The notes under the pieces were generated by a model that was not told the DNA's origin, did not search any database, and worked only from the letters and a program-made list of their open reading frames with translations. A program made the position numbers and the translations under genes. This document shows positions 9,589-62,061 of a stretch of DNA of 64,000 nt, in pieces. Origin of the DNA: Macrostomum lignano (lineage: Eukaryota). Each line of letters begins with the position of its first letter. Position 1 is the stretch's first letter. The stretch is from positions 62,001 through 126,000 of the forward strand of contig NIVC01001187.1 in NCBI GenBank assembly GCA_002269645.1, given 5' to 3'.

Positions 9589-9863
9589 CGGCGCTGGCGA
9601 CCCTATCCAGTGGCTTCGGCCGAATTTGGGTATGCGGGTCTGGCTCGCCAACCTGCAGGCCGTGGTACTGCTCAACGTACTCTCTAATGCCTAAGGTGTT
9701 GACCGTGCCGATGGGCTGGAAGGCCGGGGAGTAGTCCGGTCGCAAGCGGTCCCCCTCCTGGTGTCGGGCCAGCCTTGAGGGTGCTATTGGCCTACTGCCC
9801 GGTCAGGTGGAGCGGCCGGGTGGGTACCGCGCCCCTTTGAGGGTAGCCCACCAACCTTTTATC

Positions 9864-11369
9864 ATGGCCTTCGAGCCGACTATGGATAAACAAGCTATTT
9901 CTAGGGACGGGGACCCTTCTAAACCCCAACCTCAGTCCGAAGGACCGGCCGGCCCTGCTGGCAGATCCCAACCGACTGATTCAACTGTGGCAAAGGAAGG
10001 ACCGGCTGGCTCTGCTGGCAGATCCGACCAGAGCTACCAAACTCAAAATACCCTAAGACCTGCCAGCTCCGCTGGTGGATCTAAGGGAACCGCGAGCTCT
10101 GAGCCTAAAGGACCGGCCAAATCTGGCAGATCCGATGAAGCTCAGCGGGCTCGGCTTGAGCGCAAACGCGCTAAACAACGCGCCAAAAGGCAGGCCAAGA
10201 AGGGAGCTGCGGGGGCCAAAGCGGCGGCGTCCACCATGGATGCTGAAGCGACTGGAGTCCCAAGGCAACCAGGCGGGCCGGCCGGTGGAAGCTCCAGTAG
10301 TTCAGCGGCGGCGCTCCCTGGAGCTGCTGCCGCGGCTGCTGAGGCCGAAACCACGGCGCAACAAATGGCCACTGCCAACAAGGAGGTTCCTTCGGGAGCT
10401 ACCTTTGCGGCGAAGGCCAAGGCCAAAATCCCGGGAGTGATCATCCAAGGTCGCGACCAGGACTGGACCACTGATCAGCTTCAAAAAGTGTGGAGTGCTG
10501 TTGACTCCTATCTGATTGAGCTGACTGTCGAGGAGGGAATCTCCATCGGCGTTGAGCGGATGGTGCTGCGAAGCACATTCGTTCTTATTGCTCCTAGCAG
10601 CGAGGAGGACGCTCGGCGGCTGCTCCAGCGGCTACCGACGGTCTCCTTGGATGCTGACCTTGGTGGAGCTCTTTTTCTTCGCGAGGGCCAGCGTCCAAAG
10701 ACGATACCCTATGTGGTTTTCGTCCCTGCTAAGAGCACCGCAGCTGGACCAGACGTTATTCGCCGGGTCCTACTGCGTCTGAACCCCGACCTCCCTGCTA
10801 GTGGACTGGTGTATCACCGCAAAGTCCGCAGGGGGGAGACGGGCAACTCAATTGTCCTCGGCCTTTCCAGCACTTGGGCGAGTCGGTACCCTAATGGATC
10901 CTCTTTCCAGCTGGGTGCCCTCAAGCTCAAGTTGCGCCGAGGAAAGTCTGCCAAAGGGAAGGCTACTGCCAACCCCGGCATCTCCGGCAAGAGCGGGGCG
11001 CAGTCTAAGGCCCAAGGAAAGGCGCAAGCCGATCCCAAAGCCAAAGCTGCATCTCGCCCCTCTGCTAGCAGCAGTTCGGCGACCGCGGTAACGGCTCCGG
11101 CCGAGCCCCGGGAACCAAACCTGCCAGTCGGAGAAGGAGTTGAGGACGAGGCCGGGTCTTCGGAATCCGAGCTCTCCTCGGCCACCTTGGTGGGGTCTGA
11201 AGGTAAAGATGCAGGTGAGGAAGCTTCCTCCATCCTGTCATCGGAGCCTGAGGACTCTGCTGGGGGGGCCGGTGGGGGTGAGGAGGCCATGGACGTCGAC
11301 CAACTCCCATCTCCCAGTCAAGCCCCAGCGGCCTGGGACGAGGACGATCTGTTGTCCAAGTCTCCTTGA
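9864..11369 (+). CDS. LINE ORF1 (gag-like; basic/low-complexity ends, central DUF4780-like domain)
   Basis: Open frame 9807-11369, first ATG at 9864. Central segment VFVP...PDVIRRVLLRLNPDL...IVLGL...FQLG resembles LOA-type ORF1s. No CCHC knuckle seen. Confidence 0.8.
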   Translation: MAFEPTMDKQAISRDGDPSKPQPQSEGPAGPAGRSQPTDSTVAKEGPAGSAGRSDQSYQTQNTLRPASSAGGSKGTASSEPKGPAKSGRSDEAQRARLERKRAKQRAKRQAKKGAAGAKAAASTMDAEATGVPRQPGGPAGGSSSSSAAALPGAAAAAAEAETTAQQMATANKEVPSGATFAAKAKAKIPGVIIQGRDQDWTTDQLQKVWSAVDSYLIELTVEEGISIGVERMVLRSTFVLIAPSSEEDARRLLQRLPTVSLDADLGGALFLREGQRPKTIPYVVFVPAKSTAAGPDVIRRVLLRLNPDLPASGLVYHRKVRRGETGNSIVLGLSSTWASRYPNGSSFQLGALKLKLRRGKSAKGKATANPGISGKSGAQSKAQGKAQADPKAKAASRPSASSSSATAVTAPAEPREPNLPVGEGVEDEAGSSESELSSATLVGSEGKDAGEEASSILSSEPEDSAGGAGGGEEAMDVDQLPSPSQAPAAWDEDDLLSKSP

Positions 11370-11408
11370 TGGCCCTGGGCTCTAGCCAGATATTGCATTT
11401 AATACAGT

Positions 11409-14400
11409 ATGACTAAGCTCCACGCTGCCAAAGGAGCGACATTCTGTCTGCAAATAAATTTACAGCATTGCGTATCTGCGTCAGTAAATCTGATGAAGAT
11501 TGCTGAGCTGTACAGGCCAGGCCTCATCCTGATCCAGGAACCCTGGATGCGCAACGGTAAGTTGCCCAACATTCCCTCTGGCTACTCTGATTTTTATGTG
11601 TGTGGCCCGGGGAACAGCCGCCCTAGAGCGGCTATCCTCGCTGCTAGCCATCTCCAGGCTTGGCTGAGGACTGATCTCTCTGATGGAGACCTTTGCGTCA
11701 TCCAATCTAATCATTTCTCTCCGCGTACGTGTCTTGTTGCCTCGGTTTATATCCCAGGCGACAGAGACCCTGCTCCCGAGAGTTTACTGCGCCTTGCGCA
11801 GTACTGCGAGTCCCAGAACGCTGAGCTGTGCTTAGGGGGCGACCTCAACGCGCACCACAAGCACTGGGGCAGCAAAGATACCAACACTAGAGGAGAGGAG
11901 CTTCTGGCCCTCATCTCTAACACAAACCTCATGCTCTGCAACCGCGGCAGCACTCCTACCTTTAATAATGGCAGATGGACCGAGGTCCTCGACGCCACAC
12001 TCGTTACCCCAAGACTCTTTGACAGAGTCAAGGAGTGGAGAGTCTGGTCTGAGGAGCCCTCCCTGTCTGACCACTGCTTTATCGCCTTTAACATCGCGGA
12101 CACTAAAACCCAGTCTCCGATCACTTGGAGACGCAATATCCGCAACACTGATTGGGCGGCCTACAAGGCTGCCCTTGATCTGCACCTGCAGGAACTCACG
12201 GACTTACGTCCGATTGAGACCTGCGAGGATGTGGATCATATGGCTGAGACGCTGACAGGTTGCATTATTGCAGCCTACGAAGCGGCTTGTCCTGCTCGCG
12301 CCTACAGAGGCAAGACCTCGGCGCCGTGGTGGAACCCGGAGCTGGGGAAACTCAGGCGGAAGGCCAAAAGCCTTCATCGCCGTGCCATGAAGACCGGAAA
12401 CCCGGAGGACATGGAGCTTTTCCGGCAAGCCTCCCGCAATTTCAAATCTGAAGTGCGCAAGGCCAAGGAATGTAAGTGGCGCCAATTCTGCAATGAATTG
12501 GATCAAGACAGACCTACTTCTAGGCTTGTCAAGGCCCTTACAATGGACAAAATGTCCAAATTAGCCATGATAAAAAAGATGATGGCTCTCTTACTAAAGA
12601 CCCTGAAGAAGTGCTTCAGCATATGCTTAGCACATTCTTCCCGAGGGTACCTACTGCTAGACCGGAGCCCAACCATTCGATGGATGGAGCCACCCTAGCG
12701 GCGGGCATTGTCACTGAAGACCTAATCGCTCGTGCGGTCAGAACCTTCAAACCCTTCAAATCTCCTGGACCTGATGGTATCTACCCTGTTCTCCTTCGTG
12801 AAGCAGCCAAGATACCCTCGTTCCTGAGACTCACCCGCAATCTTATGCGGGCCTCTATCCAGCTGGGATACGTTCCCAAAAGCTGGACTGAAGCTCGAGT
12901 AGTCTTTATTCCCAAACCTGGGAAGGGTGACTACCAAAGCGTCAAGGCCTTCCGGCCAATTAGCTTAACGTCAGCAATGCTTAAGCTCACTGAGAGGCTT
13001 ATTCTCTGGCGGCTGCTCTCCTGCGAGCTGACAGCGATGCCCCTCAGCAATAATCAGCACGCCTTCCGTACCGGGAGGTCGACTGACAGCGCCCTGCATG
13101 CGATTGTCGAAAAGATTGAACGGGCGGTACTGGGTGACGGTTACGCCCTGGCTCTCTTTCTTGACATTGTTGGCGCCTTCGACAACGTTATCTTTGAAGC
13201 GTTTCAGAGGGCCCTTCAAAATCGCAAAGCTCATGCTACCCTCATACGGTGGATCATGTACATGATCTCCAACCGTACGGTCACTGCCCAACTTCTTGGG
13301 CAAACTGCCTCCACCAGAGTCTGTAAGGGTGGACCCCAAGGCGGAGTCCTCACCCCGACGCTCTGGAACCTGGTCATGGACGCTCTTCTGAGTGACTCCC
13401 GACCTGACCCCGTCTTCAAAGTCGGGTATGCTGATGACGTCACGGCCATTGTGGCAGGACCGTCTCCCAGCACGCTCAGGGATCTGATGCAGAGCTTTAT
13501 CCGCAAAGCAGAATCCTGGGCCAATGACAATGGTTTGGAACTCTCTGAGCCCAAAACCGTTGCCATTATGTTTACCAGCAGACTACGCTGGAACATACGT
13601 CCTCTGCAGCTCTACGGCAGAGATATTGCCTTCGCGCACCAGACCAGATGTCTCGGGGTCACACTTGACCACCGGCTCAACTGGTCCTTCCACGTGAAAG
13701 CAAAAGCTAAGCGTGCCTCAGCCATCCTGGCCCAGCTCCGACGAGCACTTGGCACTTCTTGGGGTCTATCCCCAAAGCGGCTTTGGTGGATCTATACTTC
13801 CGTAGTTAGACCTGCCATTACGTACGCCTCTGTTGTCTGGGTTAGCGCTACCCAGGTCAAAAGCCATGCAGACCTGCTCAACACGATCCAAGGCAGAGCG
13901 TGTAGGCTCATCTGCAACGCCACCAGGTCCACGCCCTTTGCTGGCATGGGGGCCTTTCTTAATCTTCCGCCTCTTGACCTCTTCATCAGGGGTGAGGCGG
14001 CTAGAACGACGCGGCGTCTAATTGATGCCGACGTCAAATTCATTTACATGAGAGCACCTGCTAAGCGGAACCTTGTCCCGCATAGCGATCTGTGCCTCAA
14101 CTTTCTCAACGAGTGTCAGGCCAATCGCGTCTTCACCGATGGCATTGCCTCAACGCTCAACCTGAGACAGCGCTACTCCGTAGCTATCGACTCGCGCGAT
14201 AACATCAATGACCATTGGAACCCTGGTGAGCTTCATTGCTACACCGACGGTTCTAAGCAGTCAGCCAACACCGGCTTTGGTGTTGGAATCTTTCTGAACG
14301 GGAGGGTCATCGCTACCCACGCTCAATACACTGGGGTCAACTCCAGTGTTTTCCAAAATGAAGTTCTGGCCATCAGCTCCTGCACTGCAGAGCTTCTCGC

Positions 14401-15148
14401 CACTGGCGTTACTGGTAAGAACATCATTTTCCATTCGGACAGCCAAGCTGCCTTGCACGCCATCAGTGGCTGCAGCACCAACTCTGCTACAGTCCTTGAC
14501 TGTATCAAACTCCTCAATGTGTTGGGTTCCGCCAACAAAATTACCCTTAAGTGGGTTCCGGGGCATGTGGGGATCCGAGGAAATGAGTTGGCTGACACCC
14601 TTGCAAAAGTTGGTGCCTCCGGCTCCTCTCTCGGCCCCGAACCTCTTGTCCCGATTCCTGGCTGTGTCATCGACTCGCGCATCAAAGCGTGGATCAGGAC
14701 TCAGCACCGCTCGACTTGGGCGAACCGCACGAACTGCAGGCAATCCAGAGGCGCTGTCCCTCAGCCCTCTCACCAGCTCCGGAAGCTCCTCTTGCGCCTC
14801 TCGCGCAGAGACATCCGGGCTGCCACCATGACCCTCTCTGGTCACGGCTGCTTCTCCAGGCACCAGTACCTGCAGGGCAACGCCACCAACGCCACCTGTA
14901 GTTTCTGCAACTCAGGTGACGAAACCGCTGAGCATTTCGTCAGCATCTGTCCCGCCTTCACGCGGGCCAGACTCACTTACCTCGGGCCACACACATCTAT
15001 TACTGAAGCGTGCAAACCCGAAAACTTTAATCAGCTCATGCGCTACCTTCGGGCCACCCGCAGGGCTGAACTCTCCTTTCCAGAGAGCACCATAGCTGCT
15101 GGCGACACTGGGGGACCTCCCTGGGCGGCGCCAACCCTCCGTCCATAG
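11409..15148 (+). CDS. LINE ORF2 (AP endonuclease - RT - RNase H - CCHC), split by one frameshift at ~12572-12578
   Basis: APE: LIQEPW, GGDLNAHH, SDH. RT: KSPGPDG, RPISL, QHAF, LDIVGAFD, GPQGGVL, YADD. RNase H: YTDGSK, NE, HSDS, WVPGH. C-terminal CSFC...H...C. A -1 shift restores IKKDDGSLTKDPEEVLQHML. Confidence 0.92.
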
Positions 15149-15560: not shown

Positions 15561-15849
15561 AGCAGTTTCCGCTGCATCAAATCAAATTCCAGAAGCTTTC
15601 GTTAACTTGGCTTCTCTCCCGGCAGCAAGAAGTTTACTCTTAAAGCCCTTTCCTAATTAACTGCCATATGCAGTTTAGGAGATTTTCATGTAAATCAGGA
15701 AAACACAAGCTGAAAAAACAATGAGATACAGTTTCTTTTGTAGAGCAGACATAAAAAATGCAGTTCATAGACACAAATGTATTTTTTCATTTTCAGATAC
15801 ATAATGGTATTACAACTCAACCAGGCAATATTAAGTAGGATGCAGCAGT

Positions 15850-18569
15850 TCAAGGAGTCGTCCCAGACTCCGCCGCATCAGTCTTCCCAGCCTCCGCCGC
15901 ATCAGTCTTCCCAGACTCCGCCGCATCAGTCTTCCCAGACTCCGCCGCATCAGTCTTGCCAGCCTCCGCCGCATCAGTCTTCCCAGACTCCGCCGCATCA
16001 GTCTTGCCAGCCTCCGCTGCATCAGTCTTCCCAGACTCCGCCGCATCAGTCTTGCCAGCCTCCGCCGCATCAGTCTTCCCAGACTCTGCCGCATCAGTCG
16101 TCGCAGCCTCCGTGCCCGCGGAGTGCGCGACCACCTCGCTGAGGTTGTACTTGCGGTAGCGGCGAAAGTTGCGCAGCAGGCTGAGGCACGTGACCCGCTG
16201 CAGCACGTTGACATCGATGACAACGCTGGCGCGGTCGTGGTCAACTGACCAGTCGGGGCTGACAGATTTCACAGCGGTGAAGACCCGGTTGATGACATCC
16301 TGACGCTCCAGCTTGTCGAAGTTGCGCGCCTTGAAGTGTACCGTGAAAGTCGGCTTAGCGGCTGTTGGCCAGAGGGTGGGCGGAGGCGCATCTTATTCGG
16401 CTGCGTGGATACAGAGGACAAGGTGTACTTTAACGTGCGTAACCAATATTTGGATGCTGTCAACCGCGAGCTTCTGAGATTCTCCCGCATGAACTTCCCC
16501 CATTTTTTAGTTTTTCTTGAGAATCGCGATGGGAGAATCTCGTGGGAGAATCTCAGTGGGAGGATCTCTGGGGAGAATCTTGGTGGGAGAATCTCTGTGG
16601 GAGAATCTCAGTGGGAGGATCTCTGGAGAGAATCTTGGTGTTATAATCTCTGTGGGATAATCTCTTTAGGACAATCTCGGTGTGAGAATCTCTGTGGGAG
16701 AATCTCGTGGGAGAATCTCGTGGGAGAATCTCAGTGGGAGGATCTCTGGAGAGAATCTTGGTGGGGGAATCTCAGTGGGAGGATCTTTGTGGACAATCTC
16801 GGTGTGAGAATTTCTGTGGGAGAATCTCAGTGGGAGGATCTCTGTGGAGAATCTCGTAAGAATCTCTGTGGGAGAATCTCGGTGTGAGAATCTCGGTGGG
16901 AGAATCTCGGTGTGAGAATCTCGGTGTGAGAATCTGTGGGAGAATCTCAGTGTGAGAATCTGTGAGAGAATCTCAGTGTGAGAATCTGTGAGAGAATCTC
17001 AGTGGGAGGATCTCTGTGGAGAATCTCGGTGGGAAAATCTCGGTGTGAGAATCTCGGTGTGAGAATCTCGGTGTGAGAATCTCGGTGGGAGAATCTCGGT
17101 GTGAGAATCCCGGTGTGAGAATCTCGGTGGGAGAATCTCGGTGTGAGAATCTCGGTGTGAGAATCTCTGTGGAGAATCTCGGTGTGAGAATCTCTGTGGA
17201 GAATCTCGGTGTGAGAATCTCTGTGGAGAATCTCGGTGGGAAAATCTCGGTGTGAGAATCTCGGTGTGAGAATCTCGGTGTGAGAATCTCGGTGGGAGAA
17301 TCTCGGTGTGAGAATCCCGGTGTGAGAATCTCGGTGTGAGAATCTCGGTGTGAGAATCTCGGTGTGAGAATCTCGGTGTGAGAATCTCGGTGTGAGAATC
17401 TCGGTGGGAGAATCTCGGTGTGAGAATCCCGGTGTGAGAATCTCGGTGGGAGAATCTCGGTGTGAGAATCTCTGTGGGAGAATCTCAGTGGGAGGATCTC
17501 TGGGGAGAATCTTGATGGGGAAATCTCGGTGTGAGAATCCCGGTGGGAGAATCTCGGTATGAGAATCCCGGTGTGAGAATCTCTGTGGGAGAATCTCAGT
17601 AGGAGAATCTGGGTGGGAGAAGTTCCTGGGGGAAATCTCGTGCTCGTGACTACCAAAAAAAGCGGGCCAGCTTACCTGTGACTCGATCAGCAGCCACGAA
17701 GGCGGTCCACAGCGACTCGAAGGCCTCGCCGATGTCCTGCAGGCCGGAGGCGCAGGTGGCCTCCACCGGCAGCAGCCGCAGGATATGGCGGCCGCCGACG
17801 CCGCGACTGCCGTCGCCTCGGGCGGCCGCCGCCACAGCCGCTTCAAAGACAGCGTCGGTGACATCGAAGAGCCACGGCAGGCGCGAGTCCGGCAGCGAGA
17901 CGCCGACGAATACGCAGTTCGGCACCTGCGCGAATTAGCCGGCGGCGTGAGGTCAGCGATATGTATCGAAAACTATCATGAGCAGGCGGTGGGAGTTAGG
18001 GGTGGAAGGTCGCGGCCTGGGACGGTTCGCAGGGGGGGGGGGTGGGGCTGTGTGCACTGCCACAAGCTGACCAGAGGCAGGGAGGGGAAGAGCAGTCATG
18101 CCCAAGTCCGCTGACTCCAGATTTCTAGGCTCGGCGTTGACTATTAGAAAGTCCGCGGCAGGAGGCAGAATTGCCTCAGCGCCAGCAGTGAGTCTCACTC
18201 GGCGTCAACACTCGCCTTAGTCGGCAGGTGCTCGCACGGCTGCGCAGCGGCCGCCCGGAGGCCCAGCCCGCCGCCGCGAGCCCGCTCCCGCTCCAGGCAC
18301 CGCTGGATGTCATCCTCAGCGTTGTCGCCATCATCAGCATCTTCCTCGGCGCCTTCGTTGTCTTCAGCTGGATCGTCAGGCAGGAAAGTGTCCAGCAGGT
18401 CGAGGGCCTCGCCGACGCACTCGCGCTCCCGCTTGTTGCAGGTGACCAGCAGGCCGCGCCAGCCAGCGGTCAGCAGCTGCTGGCGGCCGCCCCGCGGCCT
18501 CTTGGCGGCCAGAGCGGCCTGCCGGCGGTAGGCGGCCTTCCGCTTGCGCTTGTCCAGCTGGCGGTCCGA
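15850..18569 (-). CDS. THUMPD1: THUMP domain-containing protein 1 (Tan1 orthologue, tRNA ac4C adaptor); no genomic ATG found
   Basis: Exons 18569-18216 (GC donor), 17925-17676, 16361-15850. Motifs GWRGLLVTCNKRERECVGEA, NCVFV, TFTVHFKARNFDKLERQDVI and CLSLLRNFRRYRKYNLSEVV match THUMPD1. Confidence 0.88.
16520..17640. repeat. 14-bp intronic minisatellite (GAGAATCTCGGTGT)
   Basis: Tandem degenerate units in THUMPD1 intron 17675-16362. Confidence 0.94.
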
Positions 18570-18747
18570 CTGAATCGCAATCGCGGAGGGGCGGTGGGAG
18601 ATTGCACGCCTGTATTGCTACTAATTTAAGTAGGCTATCTCGGTTTTCTGTTCACTTGCGAAAAACAGCAAGGATTTGCGCTCGCTGGGCCACTGCATGG
18701 CCGGTTTGTAGTTAATTGCATTGTAGATTTTTATTAACATCAACTGG

Positions 18748-19120
18748 ATTGGTTTCCCTAATGGTCATAGATTGGTTTCCCTAATGGTCATAGATTGGTT
18801 TCCCTAATGGTCATGGGTGATTGGTTTCCCTAATGGTCATAGATTGGTTTCCCTAATGGTCATGGGTGATTGGTTTCCCTAATGGTCATAGATTGGTTTC
18901 CCTAATGGTCATGGGTGATTGGTTTCCCTAATGGTCATGGGTGATTGGTTTCCCTAATGGTCATGGAAGATTGGTTTCCCTAATGGTCATGGGTGATTGG
19001 TTTCCCTAATGGTCATGGGTGATTGGTTTCCCTAATGGTCATGGATGATTGGTTTCCCTAATGGTCATGGAAGATTGGTTTCCCTAATGGTCATGGAAGA
19101 TTGGTTTCCCTAATGGTCAT
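18748..19120. repeat. 23-25-bp minisatellite (GATTGGTTTCCCTAATGGTCATG) between CACYBP and THUMPD1
   Basis: Tandem copies visible. Confidence 0.93.
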
Positions 19121-19515
19121 GCCTGAACGGAAGTGATCATGACTTACTGGTTTCCCGAACGGGATGAGGACAAAAATAGTCGGTTTAATTGGCCTAAATT
19201 CAATTCTAAAGCAGGTCAAGTCTGTAAAAGACGCAAATCACAACAGACCAGATTTACAACAAACAGCAAGCCTAAAAGCGGCCTGGCACTTCCACCGGAC
19301 AAGAATTCAAATTTCCAAAGGCGCCATACTGACGGGCCGCCAGCAACTGTAACTTTATTACGGCTGACACGATTGAAGCAACATAGAAAACATTAACTGA
19401 CACGAATTCGCATGCAGACGCGATTTCAGTAGAAAATAATTGGCTGAATAGAAAATAAACCACAGAGGTGGTCTTGAATAAACTAAGACTCCAAACACTC
19501 CAGCGGCCCTGCAGT

Positions 19516-22500
19516 TCAAAGTCCCGGATCGCCCGCGCCTCGCTTGCTCTGCGACTCCGAGAACGCCTTGGCGATGGTCCGCTTCATCTCGTCGTCGCCC
19601 TCCTCGTACATCTGGCGCATCAGCCCCATCATGCTGGCGCTGGGGTCCTCGTCAGCGCCCGGCGCCTTCTTGCTGCTGGCCGCCTTCTTGGCTTCGCTGG
19701 CCCGCCGCTCGTGCTCGGTGACGAATTCCCACCTGCAGTGCGAAATGGGGGAGGCTCACCTGACTGCCTGGGTGCATATGGTCATGGCCCTCTGCCTGAG
19801 TGCATATGGTCATGGCCCTCTGCCTGACTGCATATGGTCATGGCCCTCTGCCTGACTGCATATGGTCATGGCCCTCTGCCTGACTGCATATGGTCATGGC
19901 CCTCTGCCTGACTGCATATGGTCATGGCCCTCTGCCTGACTGCATATGGTCATGGCCCTCTGCCTGACTGCATATGGTCATGGCCCTCTGCCTGAGTGCA
20001 TATGGTCATGGCCCTCTGCCTGACTGCATATGGTCATGGCCCTCTGCCTAACTGCATATGGTCATGGCCCTCTGCCTGACTGCATATGGTCATGGCCCTC
20101 TGCCTGACTGTATATGGTCATGGCCCTCTGCCTGACTGCATATGGTCATGGCCCTCTGCCTGACTGCATATGGTCATGGCCCTCTGCCTGACTGCATATG
20201 GTCATGGCCCTCTGCCTGACTGCATATGGTCATGGCCCTCTGCCTGACTGCATATGGTCATGGCCCTCTGCCTGACTGCATATGGTCATGGCCCTCTGCC
20301 TGACTGCATATGGTCATGGCCCTCTGCCTGACTGCATATGGTCATGGCCCTCTGCCTAACTGCATATGGTCATGGCCCTCTGCCTGAGTGCATATGGTCA
20401 TGGCCCTCTGCCTGACTGTATATGGTCATGGCCCTCTGCCTGACTGCATATGGTCATGGCCCTCTGCCTGACTGCATATGGTCATGGCCCTCTGCCTGAC
20501 TGCATATGGTCATGGCCCTCTGCCTGACTGCATATGGTCATGGCCCTCTGCCTAACTGCATATGGTCATGGCCCTCTGCCTGACTGCATATGGTCATGGC
20601 CCTCTGCCTGAGTGCATATGGTCATGGCCCTCTGCCTAACTGCATATGGTCATGGCCCTCTGCCTGAGTGCATATGGTCATGGCCCTCTGCCTGACTGCA
20701 TATGGTCATGGCCCTCTGCCTGACTGCATATGGTCATGGCCCTCTGCCTGAGTGCATATGGTCATGGCCCTCTGCCTGACTGCATATGGTCATGGCCCTC
20801 TGCCTGACTGCATATGGTCATGGCCCTCTGCCTGACTGCATATGGTCATGGCCCTCTGCCTGAGTGCATATGGTCATGGCCCTCTGCCTGACTGCATATG
20901 GTCATGGCCCTCTGCCTGACTGCATATGGTCATGGCCCTCTGCCTGACTGCATATGGTCATGGCCCTCTGCCTGACTGCATATGGTCATGGCCCTCTGCC
21001 TGACTGCATATGGTCATGGCCCTCTGCCTGACTTCATATGGTCATGGCCCTCTGCCTGACTGCATATGGTCATGGCCCTCTGCCTGACTGCATATGGTCA
21101 TGGCCCTCTGCCTGACTGCATATGGTCATGGCCCTCTGCCTGACTGCATATGGTCATGGCCCTCTGCCTGACTGCATATGGTCATGGCCCTCTGCCTGAC
21201 TGCATATGGTCATGGCCCTCTGCCTGACTTCATATGGTCATGGCCCTCTGCCTGACTGCATATGGTCATGGCCCTCTGCCTGACTGCATATGGTCATGGC
21301 CCTCTGCCTGACTGCATATGGTCATGGCCCTCTGCCTGACTTCATATGGTCATGGCCCTCTGCCTGACTGCATATGGTCATGGCCCTCTGCCTGACTGCA
21401 TATGGTCATGGCCCTCTGCCTGACTGCATATGGTCATGGCCCTCTGCCTGACTGCATATGGTCATGGCCCTCTGCCTGACTTCATATGGTCATGGCCCTC
21501 TGCCTGACTTCATATGGTCATGGCCCTCTGCCTGACTGCATATGGTCATGGCCCTCTGCCTGACTGCATATGGTCATGGCCCTCTGCCTGACTGCATATG
21601 GTCATGGCCCTCTTCTGCCTGACTGCATATGGTCATGGCCCTCTGCCTGACTGCATATGGTCATGGCCCTCTGCCTGACTGCATATGGTCATGGCCCTCT
21701 GCCTGACTGCATATGGTCATGGCCCTCTGCCTGACTGCATATGGTCATGGCCCTCTGCCTGACTGCATATGGTCATGGCCCTCTGCCTGACTGCATATGG
21801 TCATGGCCCTCTGCCTGACTGCATATGGTCATGGCCCTCTGCCTGACTGCATATGGTCATGGCCCTCTGCCTGACTGCATATGGTCATGGCCCTCTGCCT
21901 GACTTCATATGGTCATGGCCCTCTGCCTGAGTGCATATGGTCACGGCCCTCTGCCTGACTGCATATGGTCATGGCCCTCTGCCTGACTTCATATGGTCAT
22001 GGCCCTCTGCCTGACTGCATATGGTCATGGCCCTCTGCCTGACTGCATATGGTCATGGCCCTCTGCCTGACTGCATATGGTCATGGCCCTCTGCCTGACT
22101 TCATATGGTCATGGCCCTCTGCCTGACTGCATATGGTCATGGCCCTCTGCCTGACTGCATATGGTCATGGCCCTCTGCCTGACTGCATATGGTCATGGCC
22201 CTCTGCCTGAGTGCATATGGTCATGGCCCTCTGCCTGAGTGCATATGGTCATGGCCCTCTGCCTGACTGCATATGGTCATGGCCCTCTGCCTGACTGCAT
22301 ATGGTCATGGCCCTCTGCCTGAGTGCATATGGTCACGGCCCTCTGCCTGACTGCATATGGTCATGGCCCTCTGTCTGAGTGCATATGGTCATGGCCCTCT
22401 GCCTGAGTGCATATGGTCATGGCCCTCTGCCTGACTTCATATGGTCATGGCCCTCTGCCTGAGTGCATATGGTCATGGCCCTCTGCCTGACTTCATATGG

Positions 22501-23171
22501 TCATGGCCCTCTTCTACCTGAGTGCATATGGTCATGGCCCTCTTCTACCTGAGTGCATATGGTCATGGCCCTCTTCTACCTGAGTGCATATGGTCATGGC
22601 CCTCTTCTGCCTGACTGCATATGGTCATGGCCCTCTTCTACCCGAGTTTATGTCCCACAGCCAAGCAAGCATGGACCCACCTGTTGCAGGCGGCCTTCCG
22701 CAGGCTCAGAAGCACCTGATCGGACTTGACCTTGAACGAGCAGCTGTCCGGCAGGATGCGGTCGTACAGGCGGGGAATTCGCAGCTCCCTGTCACGACCG
22801 TTCAGGCCGCGAACCCGCAGCAGCACGGAGTTCTCGGTGAACTCGGCCGTCACGGCGTCCTTGTCGAGGCTGCCCACCCCGGACAGGCCCTCGGACACAT
22901 AGAGCTTGCAGAATTTGTCCGAGTCGTCCCAGGCGTAGGTTTTGATCTCGGTGGTGAAGGACCTGTCCGACTGGCTGGCGGCCGAGCCGGCCGACTTGCC
23001 CGCTGGCTGGTCGCCGCCGGCGGCCTCTGCGGCAGCGGCCAAGTCCGTCTCAATGCGGCGAATCTGCAGGTCCAGCAGGTCCTGCACCCGCGGCCGCTGG
23101 CTGCTGGCGCGAAGTTCGCGCAGCTCCTGAAGGTCGAGCCTCTGATTTTCCAATGCAGCGGCTGATGACAT
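19516..23171 (-). CDS. CACYBP: Calcyclin-binding protein / Siah-interacting protein
   Basis: Exons 23171-22681 and 19732-19516. N-terminal helical domain, CS domain (IKTYAWDDSDKFCKLYV...KVKSDQVLLSLRK), SGS domain (DPSASMMGLMRQMYEEGDDEMKRTIAKAFSES). Confidence 0.93.
19775..22640. repeat. 28-bp intronic minisatellite (GCATATGGTCATGGCCCTCTGCCTGACT), about 100 copies
   Basis: Highly homogeneous array filling the CACYBP intron. Confidence 0.97.
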
Positions 23172-23516
23172 GGTGGCTGAGCTGTTTGGTCTGCAGTGGC
23201 CAGATAAGTTTAGTCTAACAGTTTGCTCAATACAATACTACACTGATCTAGGTATTTGAGCATCTTATACTTAATAACATTTTTTCATACACTAAAAATG
23301 ACATACATATAACCGATTGTACAACCCTCTGAGATTCTATATGAACTTTGGTTTGTTCAAGCCTTACAACCAAAGTTAAATGCAAATTATAATTTCGCAA
23401 AGCAGTTTTTAAGAGAACTCTTTTTATTTTTGGAATTCAGAGTTTTATCAATATTATTTTTCCTGTACTGTTGTAATCTTTTTGAATATTAAAGAAAATT
23501 TTCAAAATAACTACAC

Positions 23517-50100: not shown

Positions 50101-53100
50101 CGCTCACTTGGTGGCGAAGGCGGCCTCCAGCGCCTCAAGCGTGGCCGTGTTGCCCATGGACTCCAGCCGGTCAATCCAGGCCACAGCGGCGTGGCAGCTG
50201 TCCTCCTCGGCGGGCTCCAGGCCGGGGCTCCAGGCGCGCAGGCCGCTGCTGAAGGCGATGAGATTGAAAGCCACCCGGAACTTGTACAGCTGCTCCCAGA
50301 CCAGCGCCTTGAGCGCCAGTTTCAGCTCCTCCATGTACGGCGCCATCGAGCCAGAGACGTCGACAAGGAAGACCGCCCGGGTCTCCACCACGACGCCGAA
50401 GAGCCGCCGGCTGCCTGACAGCAGCCAGTGCAGCCGCTGCAGGTAGCGCTTCAGCGCACGGACGCATTCCGCATCGTAGGACTGCAGCTCCACGGGCGTG
50501 TACTGCAGGTGCTTGGTGACGCCTCTCACGTTCACCGTGGGGAACAGGCCGCTGCAGTACTTGGCCGACACCGTCTTGCCCAGCGGCTTCACCAGCTTCT
50601 CCTCGTGCCGGCAGTCCGGCCCGGAGACCAGGCGGTACAGGTCCAGGCCCAGCTTGGCCAGGCTGTACCGCTTGAACCAGGCCTTGGACGTCACCTGGTC
50701 CTCCTTGTCCGGGATCTCCGCCCGGCCCACCGCCTTGCGGACGGACTTGCCGCCCTGGTAGTCGGAGATCACCTGGCCCTTGCGGTTCCGCTCGCCCGTG
50801 TAGAAGGCCGACTTCACGCAGCGCCGGTTCAGGCGGACGCTCTCGAGCGGCTCCGCCTTGACGGAACTGGCGGCACCCGGCCGCAGGCCGAGCGCCTTCG
50901 GCACCGGCGGCTCAGAGTCCAGCGCGTCGCGCACGAACGACTGTCGGGCCAGGCTTTTCGCCGTCGGCTTCGGTGGAGGCAGCGCCTTCGGCTTGGCGCC
51001 GCCTCCCCCGCCTCCGCCGCCGTCGCCTCCGCCGCCGCCATCGGGATCGTCGTCGCCACCGGACTCCGGGCCGCTGCCCCCGCCAAGGGCCTTGGGGTAT
51101 TTGTCGGGGAACATCTCCTCGTACTTGGAGCGGACGGCATCGATGAGCGTCTTCGCCCGGCGCGAGAAATTCACGGCCTTGTCGATCTCCGACATGATAA
51201 GCCGGATGTCGTCGGACTCGATGATGCCGGTCTCGCGGAACCAGTGGAACCGGCCGCCGGTGCAGTGCGCCAGGAAGCGCAGCGAGTCGGCGGTCTTGGT
51301 GATGCTGGCGTACCTGCCGGGGATGGCGCCGTCCTTGTCGTAGTCATCCACGTTGAACAGCACGCAGTGCAGCCGCAGGTCCCGGCCGACGGCCTTCTCC
51401 TCGAGGTAGGCGCTCACCTGGAATAGTTTGTTGCGTGGAGTGGAGGAGAAGTAGCGGACTGCCAAGCGCACTTCCAAAACACACCAGTCAGCCCAGTGCC
51501 TGGCACCCCAGCCAGCTCCAAAACACCCCAGCCCGGTGCCTGACTGACACCCAGCCAGCTCCAAAACACACCAACCCGGTGCCTGACTGACACCCAGCCA
51601 GCTCCAAAACACCTCAGCCCGGTGCCTGACACCCCAGCCAGCTCCAAAACACCTCAGCCCGGTGCCTGACACCCCAGCCAGCTATCAGTCACTGCAGCCC
51701 CAGATCCTCAGCGGCAATCAGGCTCGAATATCCTAATCCGAAACTCACCTGCTCGGCGCCCTGGTCCGGAATGCCCGAGGTGAACAGGTACAGGCCCTCC
51801 GGGTACACGCGGTGCTTCTCCTCCTCCTCGTTCTCCAGCACCTTCCGCAGGGCGCCCAGCAGGTTGCGTGAGCCGGCGCACTCGAGTCCCAGAATCCACT
51901 TCCAGCCGGCCTGCAGCGAGGCTTCGCTGACCTTGACCATGGTTTTGCTGAAGAAGCGAACCTCACTACCGAACGCAACCAAGTTGAAGTAGTCTTTGTT
52001 CGACATCTGCTGCTCCATCAGCATCCGCATGGAGTGCTGGATGTGCACCAGGTAGTTCACGTTGGCCGCCGACATGTCCAGCAGGAAGAGCATGTTCCTC
52101 TCCACGATGGTGCCGAAGATCTTCCTGCTGGAGCTGGCCAGCCAGTTGATGCGCTGCTCGTACAGCTTCACCAGGTGGCCCAGCTGCTTCTGGTACTCGA
52201 ACAGCTGCGCCAGGTCCACGTGTACATTCTTCACCGAGCCGTCGTGCCAGGGGAACTGGGCCATGACCTTCTCGTGCACCTGAGATTGCACCGTCTTGCG
52301 GATGATCGGGACGAAGCCCTCGCAGTAGGAGTAGGCGTTGGGCGCGAGGATCTGGTACAGGTCCATCTTGTTGGCCTTCAGCCCGTTCTCCATCAGCCAG
52401 TCGATGCTGCTGGCCGGCTGGAACTTGGCCGGCTCCACCTTCAGCGGCTCGTCATGGCCGGGCGGCCGGGGCAGGAAGCGGGACTGCGGCAGCTTGTCGA
52501 CCTCCATGCTGATCTCGTTCATGATGCTGACCAGGGTGCTGTCCAGCATCCCCTGCCGCATCTCGCCGATCTTCTTCAGCACCTCCTGGGTGGTGTCGAT
52601 CTCTTGCAGCAGGCCGCTGATGTCCGATGAAGCGTAGATGAGCTCGTCCGAGGTGGCCGAGTAGCAGTGGAAGCGGCCGCCGGTGACCTCGGCGAGGCGG
52701 CGCAGGCCGGAGTTGCTGATCTGGCTGGCGCAGTCGAAGGCCACGGTGTGCAGCCGAAGGTCGCGCCCGGCGCTCAGCTGGAGGGCGAAGTCTTCGAGAA
52801 TGTCGGCCGGCTGATCCGGCGTGGAGCCTACGACGATGAGAATGGAGTCAACGCCGCGGAGTCTGGAGAGATGGCGCAGCGCCTTGAGCAGGTTGCAACC
52901 GCCGGCAGCCTGCGATGGCGAGGTCAATTCGGGTCAAAGCTCAGTGCTTATTTAAAAACTGGCAGTGAGTTTTACAATGCTGTTGGGTAGCGTTTGACAT
53001 TTTTTCAACCGTTTATTCGTTACGAAGCGACTTTTATCAATTGTGCAAAACCCTTGCTGTGTTTTCAGCAACGACTTGTCAATGAGACTTGCAGTACGAC

Positions 53101-55139
53101 ACATCAATACAGGTGCTAAGGCATATCCAGACAAGTTCTAGGACACATCAAGACAGGCACTAAGACACATCCAGACAGGCACTAAGACACATCCAGACAG
53201 GCACTAAGACACATCCAGACAGGCACTAAGACACATCCAGACAGGCACTAAGACACATCCAGACAGGCACTAAGATCCAAGGCATGCTGAGACGGAATCC
53301 AAGTTCGTTGGTGTACTCAACGAATTCTTCGGAAACGGCCTAAAAACTTGTTCGATCAGCATTTTTCCATTCTAAATGAGCAATTCGGAATCGAGCCCCT
53401 GTCCTCACCTGTCTGGTCATGGCGAACATCTTGGCCTCCTCCAGAGTTCTGCAGTTGACGTCCATGACGTTCGGCCAGAGCAGCTGCAACTCCGTACCGA
53501 AGGACATCATGTACACAGACTGCTTGCTGGACAACTGCTCGTCGATGAGGTGCAGCAGCGCCTGCTGGAGTGTCTCAGCCCGGCCGAAGCTCATGTTGGC
53601 GTCCGAGCAGTCTACGCAGACGGCGACCCGCTCGCCTTGGACGAGGCCGAACAGCTTCCTGGAGCCGCGGAGGCACCACTTGATGCGCTCGGTGTAAGCC
53701 TGCACGGCTTGGTGCAGCCGGTACTCGAACTGGATGACGTCGGCCGCGTCAAACTGCAGGTGCGGCATCGGCTTGCCGGTCTCCGCGTCCGGCTTCGGCT
53801 TGGTCAGCTTGCCGAGCTGCACGAGGTCCTTCACGGTGAGGCGCAGGGCCTCCACGCTGTGCCTCTGCAGCCACTCCTGGGTGCTCTGCTGCTCGGCGGC
53901 GCCAACCTCCAGTCCGGAGACGCGCAGCAGGTCGTGCGTCTGGTCGATCTGCGTCACCATCAGCTCGTGCGGCGGCACCGAGTTGGCCGTGGGCACCGGG
54001 CGCCAGCGGGCGGCCCCCTGCGGAGCAGCGTAGGCGGGCATTCGATAAAGTGTTCGCAAAGACTTATTCATCATGGGGATCGATCCCTGAGGGGATGATT
54101 TATCTGAAGCATTTTCTTTAAATGAACCAACAAGTTGAATGGCGTTCAGCCCAAGTTTCTCACCTGGACATCGTCCCGCAGCAGCTTCTCGCCTTCGTAC
54201 TTTGCGTTGGTGTTGCGCATGAGGAACATGTTGAGCGCCTCCAGCATGGCCTGCTGCTCCTGGCCGCTGCTCCGCTCACCGCGATCCAGGGCAACGCGCA
54301 TCAGCCCCGGCTCCGGCTTCTTGCCGGGCGTCGGCTTCTTCTGTCGCTGGTGACGGCGCCAGCTCGCGTCATCTTCCTCTTCGTCATCTTCTTCCTCCTC
54401 CTCCTCTTCCTCGTCCTCTTCCTCGAACAAGTCATCGGGTTCCGCCGCCTCATCTTCTGCGCGATCCGACAAATTAAAACAAACAATACGTTATTTACGC
54501 TCGTACTAGTTTAATTATTTTTAACAGTAAAAGTAATTTAATGACAAAAGTTTCTGGACATAGGTGTATGTGCTCAATTAGCAGTTTTAGTTATTCTATA
54601 TTTAAAATCCGGTCCTTCACTGTATGCTTCTTTCGATTGAAGTACATTTTAGGTAGAAGTTCATGCAATGCTCAATATTTTTTATCAATACGACCAAAAT
54701 GTTATGCAAATAGATTAAAAGCATTAAAACATTAGAATATTGCAAAAGCCTGTAGCAAAGATAGTGTATTAATATTTCAATTTTCCTAAAAGTTACTTAA
54801 ATTTCGACTTATACAAGTACACTATGTTGGCTTAAAATGCAAGAAAAATCGAGCAGAGAAAGTATCATTTTTTGCTGTAAATTTATGCTTAAGCTTAAAT
54901 AGTCATGAAATAAATAGATAAAGTCTATAAATAATATAATTAAAAGGAAATGTTTCAATGTATCCATGTAGATATGCTATGCCTACTAGTAAAATAAGTT
55001 TCAGGTTTATAGATTTTATATTATTTATATATTAACTCGTAAAGAGGTTATATATAAGGTGTGAAGGTTTAAGAAAACAAAAAAGCTAAAAAAGTAAAAA
55101 ACGGTTACCTGCTCTCCTTGCTGCTTGGCGTCGAAGCAT
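47123..55139 (-). CDS. VWA3A: von Willebrand factor A domain-containing protein 3A
   Basis: Phase-consistent exons 55139-55109, 54456-54164, 54017-53409, 52909-51749, 51417-50108, 47564-47123 (~1281 aa). LMVTQIDQTHDLLR, LYQILAPNAYS, FPWHDGSVKNVHVD, HIQHSMR, GRFHWF..TGIIESDDI and IYLLTDGKPD match VWA3A. Confidence 0.92.
47610..50097. repeat. Compound intronic minisatellite: 21/24-bp (TGATACAGGTGAGGAACTGGCTGA) then ~21-bp (GGCTGAGTCAGGTGGGGCACT)
   Basis: VWA3A last intron; switch of unit near 49925. Confidence 0.96.
51490..51685. repeat. ~40-bp intronic minisatellite (CCCAGCCAGCTCCAAAACACC...GGTGCCTGACAC)
   Basis: VWA3A intron 51748-51418. Confidence 0.88.
53140..53275. repeat. 22-bp intronic minisatellite (GACAGGCACTAAGACACATCCA)
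   Basis: VWA3A intron 53408-52910. Confidence 0.9.
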
Positions 55140-60957: not shown

Positions 60958-62061
60958 TACTAAGCAGTTCTTTTGAATCCTAGCTAGAAGCAAATAGAAA
61001 AAGATGCAGCTCTAACCATGCCAATACTCTACTTGGTCGTCAGGGTTAAATAGTCTGCTTAGCTCGCCGGCACGTTGACCACACTGGTTTACTGCACGTG
61101 ACAGCTTTCTAAAAGCTTTTCCGAAACCCAATTCCACTTCGGCCAAAGGTTTGCAAATTAACTTTAAAAGAAGCGTCTCTGCTGGAATGGAATTTCCCTC
61201 AATGGAAAACCTGCTTTGTTCACGTCTGGGAGTCTTGTTTGACCGGTTTAGCGGAAAATACGCCCGTAAGCAGCAGCTAAAATGCTCGTTATACTTCCAA
61301 CTTTTTTCACCTGCCGTTCCAGATTTGTACTCGTATTTTGGCGAGTTGCTTGCTCTGCTTCAATCTTCTTAGTAATTTGTCACGCTTTACCGGACGCTTT
61401 AGGACCCTTTGCCGGAAATGCTTCCGGAGACCGGCAATTAGACAGATTTCTCGACAAACAATGTCTATGGCGAACCCCCCATTCAGCGCTATGCAAAAGA
61501 CAAATCTTAGCAAAATCCGTTTAGAAAGCACATCTGTAGTTTGAGCGTTGCAGTTCTCGAATAATCTTGCTTTTTCAAACTTTCAACTAACTTTTGAGTT
61601 CACCTCAATCGAAACGATTCACACACTTGCTTGATTTGGACTTCGGAAGTGCGCTAGGCAGTGAAATGTTGGGAATTTAGTGCTAAAAAACTGAAAACTT
61701 GCAGTCTCGCCAATTGCAGTCTCGCCAACTTGCAGTCTCGCGACATTGTCACGATTTAAGCGTCTTTCAGTTTTCATGTACCTGTTCAATGTTCATGCAT
61801 GGTTTGCCCAAGGACGACTCTTTAAGTCATCATTGGGTTTGCCTGCAGCTGTTTCATCAACGCAAACTGCTTATTCGTATGCCAGACTTCCACAACTTTG
61901 AGCTCGCCTTTCAAAAACAGAGATACCACTTCTCGAGGCAGTGTTCCCAAAGTCGAAATAAGTAGACGCGTCTGCCTTAATGTATCAAGTAGGAGATACG
62001 TGGCCATTTTTCTCAATTATTTAGCTGTCTATAGGATCAGACGGCATGAATTCAAATTATA

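What the first reader, a model, noticed from the sequence alone, without database searches (positions are those of the whole stretch)
18560..19516. Probable operon CACYBP -> THUMPD1 in which the spliced leader supplies the start codon
The THUMPD1 frame begins right after an acceptor (GATTCAG|TCG GAC CGC, 18569) and has an in-frame TAG ~48 nt upstream. I found no ATG-bearing exon of the right phase in the ~950 bp up to the CACYBP stop; the GTAAGT-ended candidate exon at 19148 has no in-frame ATG. Flatworm spliced leaders end in AUG, which can act as initiator. SL-AUG plus this exon gives MSDRQLDKRKRKAY..., 372 aa, matching the expected length and basic N-terminus. The same-strand, closely spaced housekeeping pair fits polycistronic transcription resolved by trans-splicing, which would make this gene's translation dependent on the SL.
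Basis: partly seen in the sequence, partly recalled or inferred. Interest (0 to 1): 0.72.

Follow-up and report, generated by a model that had tools for sequence, protein, structure and literature searches.

The report
Flatworm gene whose start codon is trans-spliced
In this stretch of the flatworm Macrostomum lignano genome, the THUMPD1 gene has no start codon of its own and almost certainly gets its AUG from the spliced leader; the mechanism is already known in flatworms and the gene pair is already annotated as one transcription unit, so this is a clean example, not a new kind of thing.

Summary
It is an instance of known biology.

- **Source:** the window is Macrostomum lignano Mlig_3_7 (contig NIVC01001187.1). 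Both genes lie on the minus strand.
- **The THUMPD1 frame:** it opens at 18569, directly after ...GATTCAG. Two in-frame TAGs lie 48-54 nt upstream. The whole 371-codon frame has no in-frame ATG.
- **The spliced leader (SL):** the published 35-nt M. lignano SL ends in ATG. Joined at 18569 it reads MSDRQLDKRKRK..., 372 aa.
- **Orthologues:** they start MSD.../MS.../MD... and reach the same basic motif within 5-9 residues, so nothing but the Met is missing.
- **Public data:** Mlig006645.g2 (THUMPD1) is flagged TRANSSPLICED and listed in GenBank as 'partial', starting at this very Ser. CACYBP is Mlig006645.g1. By the authors' naming rule, both are genes cut from one transcriptional unit. Two near-identical paralogous loci have the same layout.
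- **Spacer:** the stop-to-acceptor spacer is 946 nt, or about 571 nt without its 26-nt tandem repeat. That is under the published 1-kb operon threshold.
- **Still open:** no SL reads, TSS data or protein evidence could be inspected here. Two weak cis donors (GCAAGT, GTGAAC) 86-90 nt upstream remain a minor rival. An internal promoter is not excluded.
- **Precedent:** SL-AUG initiation was shown in Schistosoma in 2006.

The parts
22681..23190 (-). CACYBP (Mlig006645.g1, PAA71039.1) exon 1. It starts after a likely SL acceptor, CTGCAG|ACC, at 23191/23190. Its own ATG is at 23171 in a GCCACCATG context. The donor AG|GTGGGT is at 22681/22680.
   Evidence: Pfam gives Siah-Interact_N, CS and SGS. 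The acceptor matches the published [T/C]TNCAG trans-splice motif.
19733..22680 (-). CACYBP intron of 2948 nt. Nearly all of it is a 28-nt tandem repeat (19764-22636, 102 copies).
19516..19732 (-). CACYBP exon 2 coding part (SGS domain). The stop TGA is at 19518-19516.
   Evidence: The spliced model equals PAA71039.1.
19354..19359 (-). AATAAA poly(A) signal of CACYBP, 157 nt after the stop. The inferred 3' end is near 19335.
   Evidence: This stretch is 100% conserved in the three paralogous loci. The poly(A) site itself is inferred, not seen.
18570..19515 (-). Intercistronic region, which is also the outron of THUMPD1. It is 946 nt long, holds 23 ATGs, and has no long ORF.
18747..19121 (-). 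26-nt tandem repeat (14.9 copies) inside the intercistronic region. Its expansion alone explains the 1419-nt and 3039-nt spacers at the two paralogous loci.
18618..18623 (-). Two in-frame TAG stop codons, 48-54 nt upstream of the THUMPD1 exon.
18570..18600 (-). Trans-splice acceptor: a C-rich pyrimidine tract, CTCCCACCGCCCCTCCGCGATTGCGATTCAG, with AG at 18571-18570.
   Evidence: It is identical in the three paralogous loci. It matches 5 of 6 positions of the [T/C]TNCAG motif.
18216..18569 (-). THUMPD1 (Mlig006645.g2, PAA71038.1) exon 1. It starts in phase 0 with TCG GAC CGC (SDR) and ends at a GC donor, AAG|GCGAGT.
17676..17925 (-). THUMPD1 exon 2.
15850..16361 (-). THUMPD1 exon 3 coding part: the THUMP domain end plus a 24-nt coding repeat. 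The stop TGA is at 15852-15850. The published transcript length of 1213 nt leaves 97 nt of UTR in total, so the 3' end would be near 15753 if the 5' UTR is only the SL.
18655..18740 (-). Rival feature: a possible short cis exon. ATGs are at 18740, 18721 and 18698. The weak donors TTC|GCAAGT (18660/18659) and CAA|GTGAAC (18656/18655) are in phase 0 with the acceptor.
   Evidence: No transcript support is known.

Best explanation
The window is a piece of the Macrostomum lignano genome. CACYBP and THUMPD1 lie head to tail on the minus strand.

Proposed mechanism: THUMPD1 pre-mRNA is cut at the acceptor AG at 18571-18570 and receives the 35-nt spliced leader. The last three bases of the leader, AUG, land directly in front of TCG GAC CGC. 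This creates the only in-frame start codon of the mRNA, giving MSDRQLDKRKRK..., 372 aa. Trans-splicing also removes an outron that carries 23 upstream ATGs and two in-frame stops. Translation of this protein therefore depends on trans-splicing.

The gene is most likely the downstream cistron of a two-gene transcriptional unit (CACYBP then THUMPD1) made from the promoter upstream of CACYBP. The unit would be resolved by polyadenylation of CACYBP near 19335 and SL addition at 18569.

Status of each step:
- Shown here: the sequence anatomy, the identity with the deposited models, and the fit to orthologue N-termini.
- Taken from published data: the TRANSSPLICED flag, the SL sequence, and the shared transcriptional unit.
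- Inferred: the exact SL site, use of the SL AUG by ribosomes, and the absence of an internal promoter.

My confidence is about 0.85 for the SL-AUG start and about 0.6 for true co-transcription.
For: - Organism and gene identity.
- SL sequence ending in ATG, and the acceptor motif.
- Mlig006645.g2 is flagged TRANSSPLICED. Its 1213-nt transcript against a 1116-nt CDS leaves only 97 nt of UTR in total.
- The deposited CDS of all three paralogues is 'partial' and begins at the Ser right after the AG. Gene 5' ends in that annotation are set by mapped SL reads.
- The frame has zero in-frame ATGs in 371 codons. The chance is about 0.001 at the orthologues' internal Met frequency of 1.8%.
- In-frame TAG TAG lies upstream.
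- SL plus exon gives a 372-aa ORF from the SL's only ATG.
- Fourteen orthologues align from their residues 2-13 and begin MSD/MS/MD followed by the KRK motif.
- Operon: CACYBP = Mlig006645.g1 and THUMPD1 = Mlig006645.g2. The same g1/g2 pairing is found at Mlig012469 and Mlig027504. The naming rule is stated in the legend read.
- Spacer: 946 nt, of which 375 nt is tandem repeat. The repeat-adjusted length of about 571 nt is under the 1-kb criterion of PMC8629364.
Against: - I could not inspect SL-containing reads, RAMPAGE/CAGE, T-fill or Ribo-seq data. The exact SL site is inferred from where the deposited CDS starts.
- The SL AUG sits in a poor Kozak context (T at -3, T at +4).
- Two weak cis donors 86-90 nt upstream are in phase with upstream ATGs. 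This gene does use a GC donor elsewhere.
- The spacer is long for an operon. The published mode is about 100 nt after repeat removal.
- A TATA-like/AATAAA stretch lies at 18735, so an internal promoter feeding a short outron is possible.
- Transcriptional units assembled by StringTie/TACO can merge neighbouring genes through read-through or repeat-derived reads.
- The three paralogous loci are 99-100% identical here, so they are not independent evidence.
Confidence: 0.75

Rival explanations
1. THUMPD1 is SL trans-spliced and uses the SL AUG, but it is a monocistronic gene. It would have its own promoter in the spacer, for example in the 177-nt unique segment 18746-18570 or in the tandem repeat. 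The shared transcriptional unit would then be an assembly artefact of read-through or repeat-derived coverage.
For: - About 60% of trans-spliced M. lignano genes are not in operons.
- The spacer is roughly 390-570 nt even after repeat removal, well above the ~100-nt mode.
- An A/T-rich TAATAAAAA stretch lies at 18735.
- THUMPD1 is in the 'Neoblast, stringent' list. CACYBP was not found in the stored part of that table, but the file was truncated, so this is only a weak hint.
Against: - The published annotation keeps both genes in one transcriptional unit at all three loci, including the one with a 3-kb spacer.
- The pair meets the published operon criterion.
- No promoter evidence is available.
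Confidence: 0.3
2. The start codon comes from a short cis-spliced 5' exon just upstream. One option is ATG 18698 (or 18740)...TTC|GCAAGT, a GC-AG intron of 90 nt. The other is ATG 18721...CAA|GTGAAC, an intron of 86 nt. Both would be spliced to the same acceptor, giving MQWPSERKSLLFF-SDRQ... or MQLTTNRPCSGPASANPCCFSQ-SDRQ.... This could be the main form or a minor form next to the trans-spliced one.
For: - Both donors are in phase 0 with an open ATG-initiated frame.
- Intron 1 of this gene uses a GC donor.
- Parasitic flatworms share acceptors between cis- and trans-splicing.
Against: - The donors are weak: the exon side is TTC or CAA, and GTGAAC lacks the G at +5.
- Several such candidates are expected by chance in 944 nt.
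- RNA-seq-based models of all three copies start at the acceptor, are called partial and are flagged TRANSSPLICED.
- A 1213-nt transcript leaves no room for a sizeable 5' exon plus a normal 3' UTR.
- Orthologues have no such N-terminal extension; they begin 5-9 residues before the KRK motif.
Confidence: 0.07
3. The locus is a non-functional or non-AUG-initiated copy. Either the lack of any ATG reflects a decaying paralogue, or translation starts at a near-cognate codon such as the CTG at codon 5.
For: - The ORF has no Met.
- M. lignano carries many duplicated genes.
- The SL AUG has a weak Kozak context.
Against: - Three copies keep an intact 331-379-codon frame with the THUMP domain.
- The gene is expressed and neoblast-enriched.
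- It appears to be the only THUMPD1 type recovered for the species.
- The SL AUG lies 5' of any near-cognate codon and in frame.
Confidence: 0.03

Closest known systems
[quoted passage not shown]
   Same: - The flatworm SL ends in AUG.
- The acceptor places that AUG in frame with an ORF that has no usable genomic AUG.
- The resulting N-terminus matches orthologues.
   Different: - The species is different: a free-living macrostomorph.
- Here the ORF has no Met codon at all.
- Translation from the SL AUG has not been tested experimentally for this gene.
Macrostomum lignano operons / multi-gene transcriptional units (Wudarski et al. 2017, PMC5730564; Ustyantsev and Berezikov 2021, PMC8629364)
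   Same: - Two same-strand conserved housekeeping genes.
- The downstream gene is SL trans-spliced.
- Both are annotated as g1 and g2 of one transcriptional unit.
- The repeat-adjusted spacer is under 1 kb and is inflated by a tandem repeat, as those authors describe.
   Different: - The spacer is at the long end of the operon class.
- This pair is not discussed individually in those papers.
- No direct precursor or TSS data were available here.
Caenorhabditis elegans operons resolved by SL2 trans-splicing
   Same: A polycistronic precursor is resolved by 3'-end formation of the upstream gene together with SL addition to the downstream gene.
   Different: - M. lignano has a single SL type with no SL1/SL2 specialisation.
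- Nematode spacers are about 100 nt.
- Nematode SLs do not end in AUG, so they do not donate an AUG start codon in this way.

Membership tests
SL-AUG-initiated flatworm mRNA (Cheng et al. 2006 class) | The organism's spliced leader ends in AUG. | tested here: met
   The organism is identified as M. lignano. The published [37 protein letters not shown], ends in ATG.
SL-AUG-initiated flatworm mRNA (Cheng et al. 2006 class) | The mRNA is SL trans-spliced at the acceptor in question. | tested here: met
   A published table flags Mlig006645.g2 as TRANSSPLICED. The deposited CDS starts at the first base after the AG in three copies. The reads themselves were not seen, so the exact site is inferred.
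SL-AUG-initiated flatworm mRNA (Cheng et al. 2006 class) | The SL AUG is in frame with the conserved ORF, with no stop in between. | tested here: met
   SL plus exons gives an uninterrupted 372-aa ORF from the SL's single ATG.
SL-AUG-initiated flatworm mRNA (Cheng et al. 2006 class) | There is no genomic in-frame AUG that could give a full-length protein. | tested here: met
   None of the 371 codons is Met. In-frame TAG TAG lies upstream. Orthologue N-termini align to residue 1.
SL-AUG-initiated flatworm mRNA (Cheng et al. 2006 class) | Ribosomes actually initiate at the SL AUG. | not testable with these tools
   This needs Ribo-seq, N-terminal proteomics or a reporter assay.
M. lignano operon (criterion of Ustyantsev and Berezikov 2021) | The genes are adjacent on the same strand, with no intervening opposite-strand gene. 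| tested here: met
   Only short spurious ORFs lie between them.
M. lignano operon (criterion of Ustyantsev and Berezikov 2021) | The downstream gene is SL trans-spliced. | tested here: met
M. lignano operon (criterion of Ustyantsev and Berezikov 2021) | The repeat-adjusted intergenic distance is below 1000 bp. | tested here: met
   946 nt from stop to acceptor, minus the 375-nt tandem repeat, gives about 571 nt. Measured from the AATAAA it is about 410 nt.
M. lignano operon (criterion of Ustyantsev and Berezikov 2021) | A single precursor transcript spans both genes. | tested here: inconclusive
   The public names Mlig006645.g1/.g2 mean one assembled transcriptional unit. The transcript itself was not inspected, and short-read assemblers can merge neighbouring genes.
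M. lignano operon (criterion of Ustyantsev and Berezikov 2021) | There is no independent promoter or TSS in the spacer. | not testable with these tools

The most novel reading that the evidence does not exclude
THUMPD1 in Macrostomum has lost its genomic start codon. A trans-splice acceptor sits at exactly the ancestral Met position: orthologues read M-S-D..., and here it is SL-AUG|TCG GAC. The protein is otherwise Met-free. Output of this neoblast-enriched factor (in other animals THUMPD1 is the NAT10 partner for tRNA ac4C, from general knowledge) would then be obligatorily gated by SL trans-splicing. That would give the worm a switch that couples translation of a stem-cell gene to trans-splicing efficiency. 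The locus would also make a natural, very clean reporter for SL-dependent initiation in a transgenic flatworm.
Probability: 0.2. Interest if true: 0.45.

Novelty: new member of a known kind. Interest (0 to 1): 0.27.

Why it matters
It matters mainly for annotation and as a teaching-grade example.

- **Annotation:** GenBank lists this protein and its two paralogues as 'partial'. It is most likely complete once the SL-encoded Met is added. Any pipeline that trims the SL including its ATG will mislabel such genes. The Macrostomum community has already noted this trimming problem (PMC10468722).
- **Experimental use:** the ORF has no other AUG, and the outron carries 23 upstream ATGs plus in-frame stops. 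The locus would therefore be an unusually clean substrate for testing SL-AUG initiation and outron 'sanitising' in M. lignano, where transgenesis exists.
- **Limits:** it does not open a new question. SL-AUG initiation, flatworm operons and the trans-spliced status of this gene are all published.

Tried and rejected
- **SL RNA gene in the window:** I searched for the SL sequence with up to 5 errors on both strands and found nothing.
- **First homologue search:** the word-indexed protein search returned only the window's own protein, because low-complexity words swamped the candidates.
- **Second homologue search:** a search with exons 2-3 returned nothing at all, not even the identical GenBank protein. 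I treat this as a tool limitation, not a biological result. The exhaustive HMMER search supplied the orthologues instead.
- **SL-bearing transcript contigs:** I hoped to find them through exact-protein look-up. Only the NCBI genome contigs carry the protein, and the form with the added Met is not in the collection.
- **Paralogue comparison:** the three loci are 99-100% identical around the acceptor and in the 3' UTR, so they carry no conservation signal. One copy has a G-to-A change that creates an upstream ATG, but it is out of frame.
- **Co-expression check:** I looked for CACYBP in the neoblast expression table. It is absent from the stored text, but the file was cut on storage, so this is inconclusive.
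- **CACYBP-THUMPD1 fusion:** splicing from the CACYBP exon 1 donor would be out of frame (phase 2 onto phase 0), so I rejected it.
- **The GTAAGT near 19148:** I rejected it as a 5' exon donor because no ATG-opened frame reaches it.
- **Operon list:** no supplementary operon list of PMC8629364 is held.

Full report
**What the window is.** The assembled THUMPD1 protein is 100% identical to GenBank PAA71038.1, 'hypothetical protein BOX15_Mlig006645g2, partial [Macrostomum lignano]'. It is encoded on contig NIVC01001187.1 of assembly GCA_002269645.1, which is Mlig_3_7. Window coordinate x corresponds to contig position 62000 + x. M. lignano is a free-living flatworm in which about 30% of genes are SL trans-spliced. 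Its single 35-nt spliced leader is CGGTCTCTTACTGCGAAGACTCAATTTATTGCATG, ending in ATG (PMC8629364).

**Check of the observation.** Both genes are on the minus strand.

- CACYBP has two exons, 23190-22681 and 19732-19516. Its own ATG is at 23171 and its stop at 19518-19516. A 2.9-kb intron between them is filled by a 28-nt tandem repeat. Pfam finds Siah-Interact_N, CS and SGS.
- THUMPD1 has three exons: 18569-18216, 17925-17676 and 16361-15850. Its translation equals PAA71038.1 exactly. Pfam finds the THUMP domain.
- The first exon begins directly after ...GATTGCGATTCAG, which is preceded by a C-rich pyrimidine tract. The 60 nt upstream read LN**QYRRAISHRPSAIAIQ in frame, with two TAGs at 18623-18618 and no ATG after them.
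- The 944 nt up to the CACYBP stop contain 23 ATGs. Sixteen of them sit in a 26-nt tandem repeat (18747-19121). None opens more than 39 codons.
The 371-codon frame contains no Met codon at all, and all 17 ATGs of the mature CDS lie in frame +1. At the 1.8% internal Met frequency of 14 orthologues, a Met-free frame of this length has a chance of about 0.001.

**Does the SL supply the start codon?** Four lines of evidence converge.

1. Appending the published SL to 18569 puts its only ATG in phase 0. This gives MSDRQLDKRKRKAAY..., 372 aa.
2. Supplementary Table 2 of Grudniewska et al. 2018 lists 'Mlig006645.g2, Mlig027504.g2, Mlig012469.g2' as THUMPD1, {Length: 1213} {TRANSSPLICED}, class 'Neoblast, stringent'. 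In that annotation, gene 5' ends are set by the TBONE pipeline from SL-containing reads mapped after the SL is trimmed (PMC5730564). The CDS is 1116 nt, so only 97 nt of UTR remain in total. That fits a transcript starting at the acceptor.
3. All three genomic copies were deposited as 5'-partial CDSs beginning S[D/G]RQLDKRKRK, at the first base after the AG. An ORF caller reports this when the SL, including its ATG, has been trimmed. If the transcript model reached further upstream, the open frame would have been extended towards the TAGs.
4. An exhaustive HMMER search found 863 relatives. Fourteen representative orthologues align from their residues 2-13 to residues 2-9 here. They begin MSDENKRGQKRKKK, MSDRNSAKRKAK, MSEKRGKKRPK, MDNRESKKRKK and similar. 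The M. lignano frame lacks exactly one residue, the Met, at the position where the SL AUG lands.

I rate SL-AUG initiation at about 0.85. The part not shown is that ribosomes use this AUG. Its context (T at -3, T at +4) is poor by vertebrate rules. No other in-frame AUG exists, however, and the mechanism has experimental precedent in Schistosoma (Cheng et al. 2006, as cited).

The claim that no ATG-bearing exon of the right phase exists is not strictly true. A systematic scan for ATG-opened frames ending at a phase-0 GT or GC found two candidates close to the acceptor.

- ATG 18698 or 18740 ... TTC|GCAAGT, a GC donor with a 90-nt intron.
- ATG 18721 ... CAA|GTGAAC, with an 86-nt intron.

This gene's intron 1 really does use a GC donor, AAG|GCGAGT. 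I know this because the model using it equals the deposited protein. I still rate the rival low, at about 0.07, for three reasons. The donors are weak on the exon side. None of the three RNA-seq-based models includes such an exon. Orthologues have no 13-27-residue N-terminal extension.

**Is it an operon?** CACYBP is PAA71039.1, BOX15_Mlig006645g1, and THUMPD1 is BOX15_Mlig006645g2. The legend of Supplementary Figure 5a of Wudarski et al. [quoted passage not shown] The public annotation therefore already treats this pair as one precursor transcript. The same g1/g2 pairing occurs at two paralogous loci, Mlig012469 and Mlig027504.

The stop-to-acceptor spacers are 946, 1419 and 3039 nt at the three loci. 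Pairwise BLAST shows the whole difference is copy number of the 26-nt repeat. It is flanked by a 394-nt and a 177-nt unique segment that are 99-100% identical among copies. Repeat-adjusted, the spacer is about 571 nt from the stop, or about 410 nt from the AATAAA at 19359-19354. That is under the 1-kb threshold Ustyantsev and Berezikov used, although well above their ~100-nt mode.

CACYBP itself probably receives the SL at CTGCAG|ACC (23191/23190). This site is a perfect match to the published YTNCAG motif, and the 241-aa paralogue model starts at the first full codon after it.

Caveats:
- I could not see the precursor transcript, the RAMPAGE data or the T-fill data.
- Short-read assemblers can merge neighbouring genes.
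- The paralogues are too similar to count as independent evidence.
- An A/T-rich stretch with AATAAA at 18735 could belong to an internal promoter or to an alternative CACYBP poly(A) site.

I put true co-transcription at about 0.6.

**Comparison with what is known, and novelty.** Every component is established.

- All reported flatworm SLs end in AUG, which can serve as the initiator. [quoted passage not shown]
- M. lignano operons and transcriptional units are described.
- The ATG at the end of the Macrostomum SL is explicitly called a translation start codon that causes annotation problems (PMC10468722).
- This very gene is tabulated as trans-spliced.

I did not find any statement that this gene's start codon comes from the SL, and the accession is still labelled 'partial'. 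A full-text search for Mlig006645 found no paper. I therefore class it as a new member of a known kind. It is a neat and unusually clean example: a Met-free ORF with the acceptor exactly at the ancestral Met position. It is not surprising to a specialist.

**Verdict.** Interest is low to moderate (0.27).

Noticed in passing
window 23171-23191 (- strand): CACYBP seems to be SL trans-spliced too, at CTGCAG|ACC. There the SL AUG is out of frame and would open a 47-codon upstream ORF overlapping the real start. The real start sits in a perfect GCCACCATG context. So within one unit, the SL AUG would be a start codon for one gene and an upstream AUG to be bypassed for the other.
   Followed up: partly
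window 18207-18216 (- strand): THUMPD1 intron 1 uses a non-canonical GC donor (AAG|GCGAGT) with a normal CAG acceptor at 17926. The model built with it equals the deposited protein exactly.
   Followed up: yes
window 15856-16112; L002 and L003 equivalents: The C-terminal tail of THUMPD1 is a 24-nt (8-aa, AESGKTDA-like) coding tandem repeat. Its copy number differs among the three paralogues (371, 379 and 331 aa). It also produces a spurious weak Cornifin Pfam hit.
   Followed up: partly
window 18747-19121 and 19764-22636; L002, L003: Tandem repeats dominate the non-coding parts of this gene pair and vary strongly between near-identical paralogous loci. The 26-nt intercistronic repeat has about 15 copies here, against roughly 33 and 95. 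The CACYBP gene spans 3671 nt here, against 2143 and 2173 nt, because of the 28-nt intron repeat. Both repeat units contain the ATGACCAT core.
   Followed up: partly
contig NIVC01001187.1: window locus vs L003 (record 24399-47098): A second CACYBP-THUMPD1-VWD gene block lies about 30-40 kb away on the same contig in inverted orientation (Mlig027504 g1/g2). This is a large inverted segmental duplication just outside the window.
   Followed up: no
window 9807-15148 (+ strand): A seemingly intact non-LTR retrotransposon lies between THUMPD1 and the next minus-strand gene. It has a 520-aa ORF1-like protein, then an APE-type endonuclease ORF (11409-12698) and an RT + RNase H ORF (12611-15148).
   Followed up: partly
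window <7721 (- strand) and 50104-54074 (- strand): Downstream of THUMPD1 is a large VWD/C8/TIL (mucin or von Willebrand-like) gene. Further along the window, three long ORFs carry VWA_3 domains, probably exons of one gene.
   Followed up: no
window 18735-18730 (- strand): A second AATAAA lies 165 nt upstream of the THUMPD1 acceptor, just after the tandem repeat. If it were used as an alternative CACYBP poly(A) signal, the effective intercistronic distance would shrink to about 140 nt, near the published operon mode.
   Followed up: no
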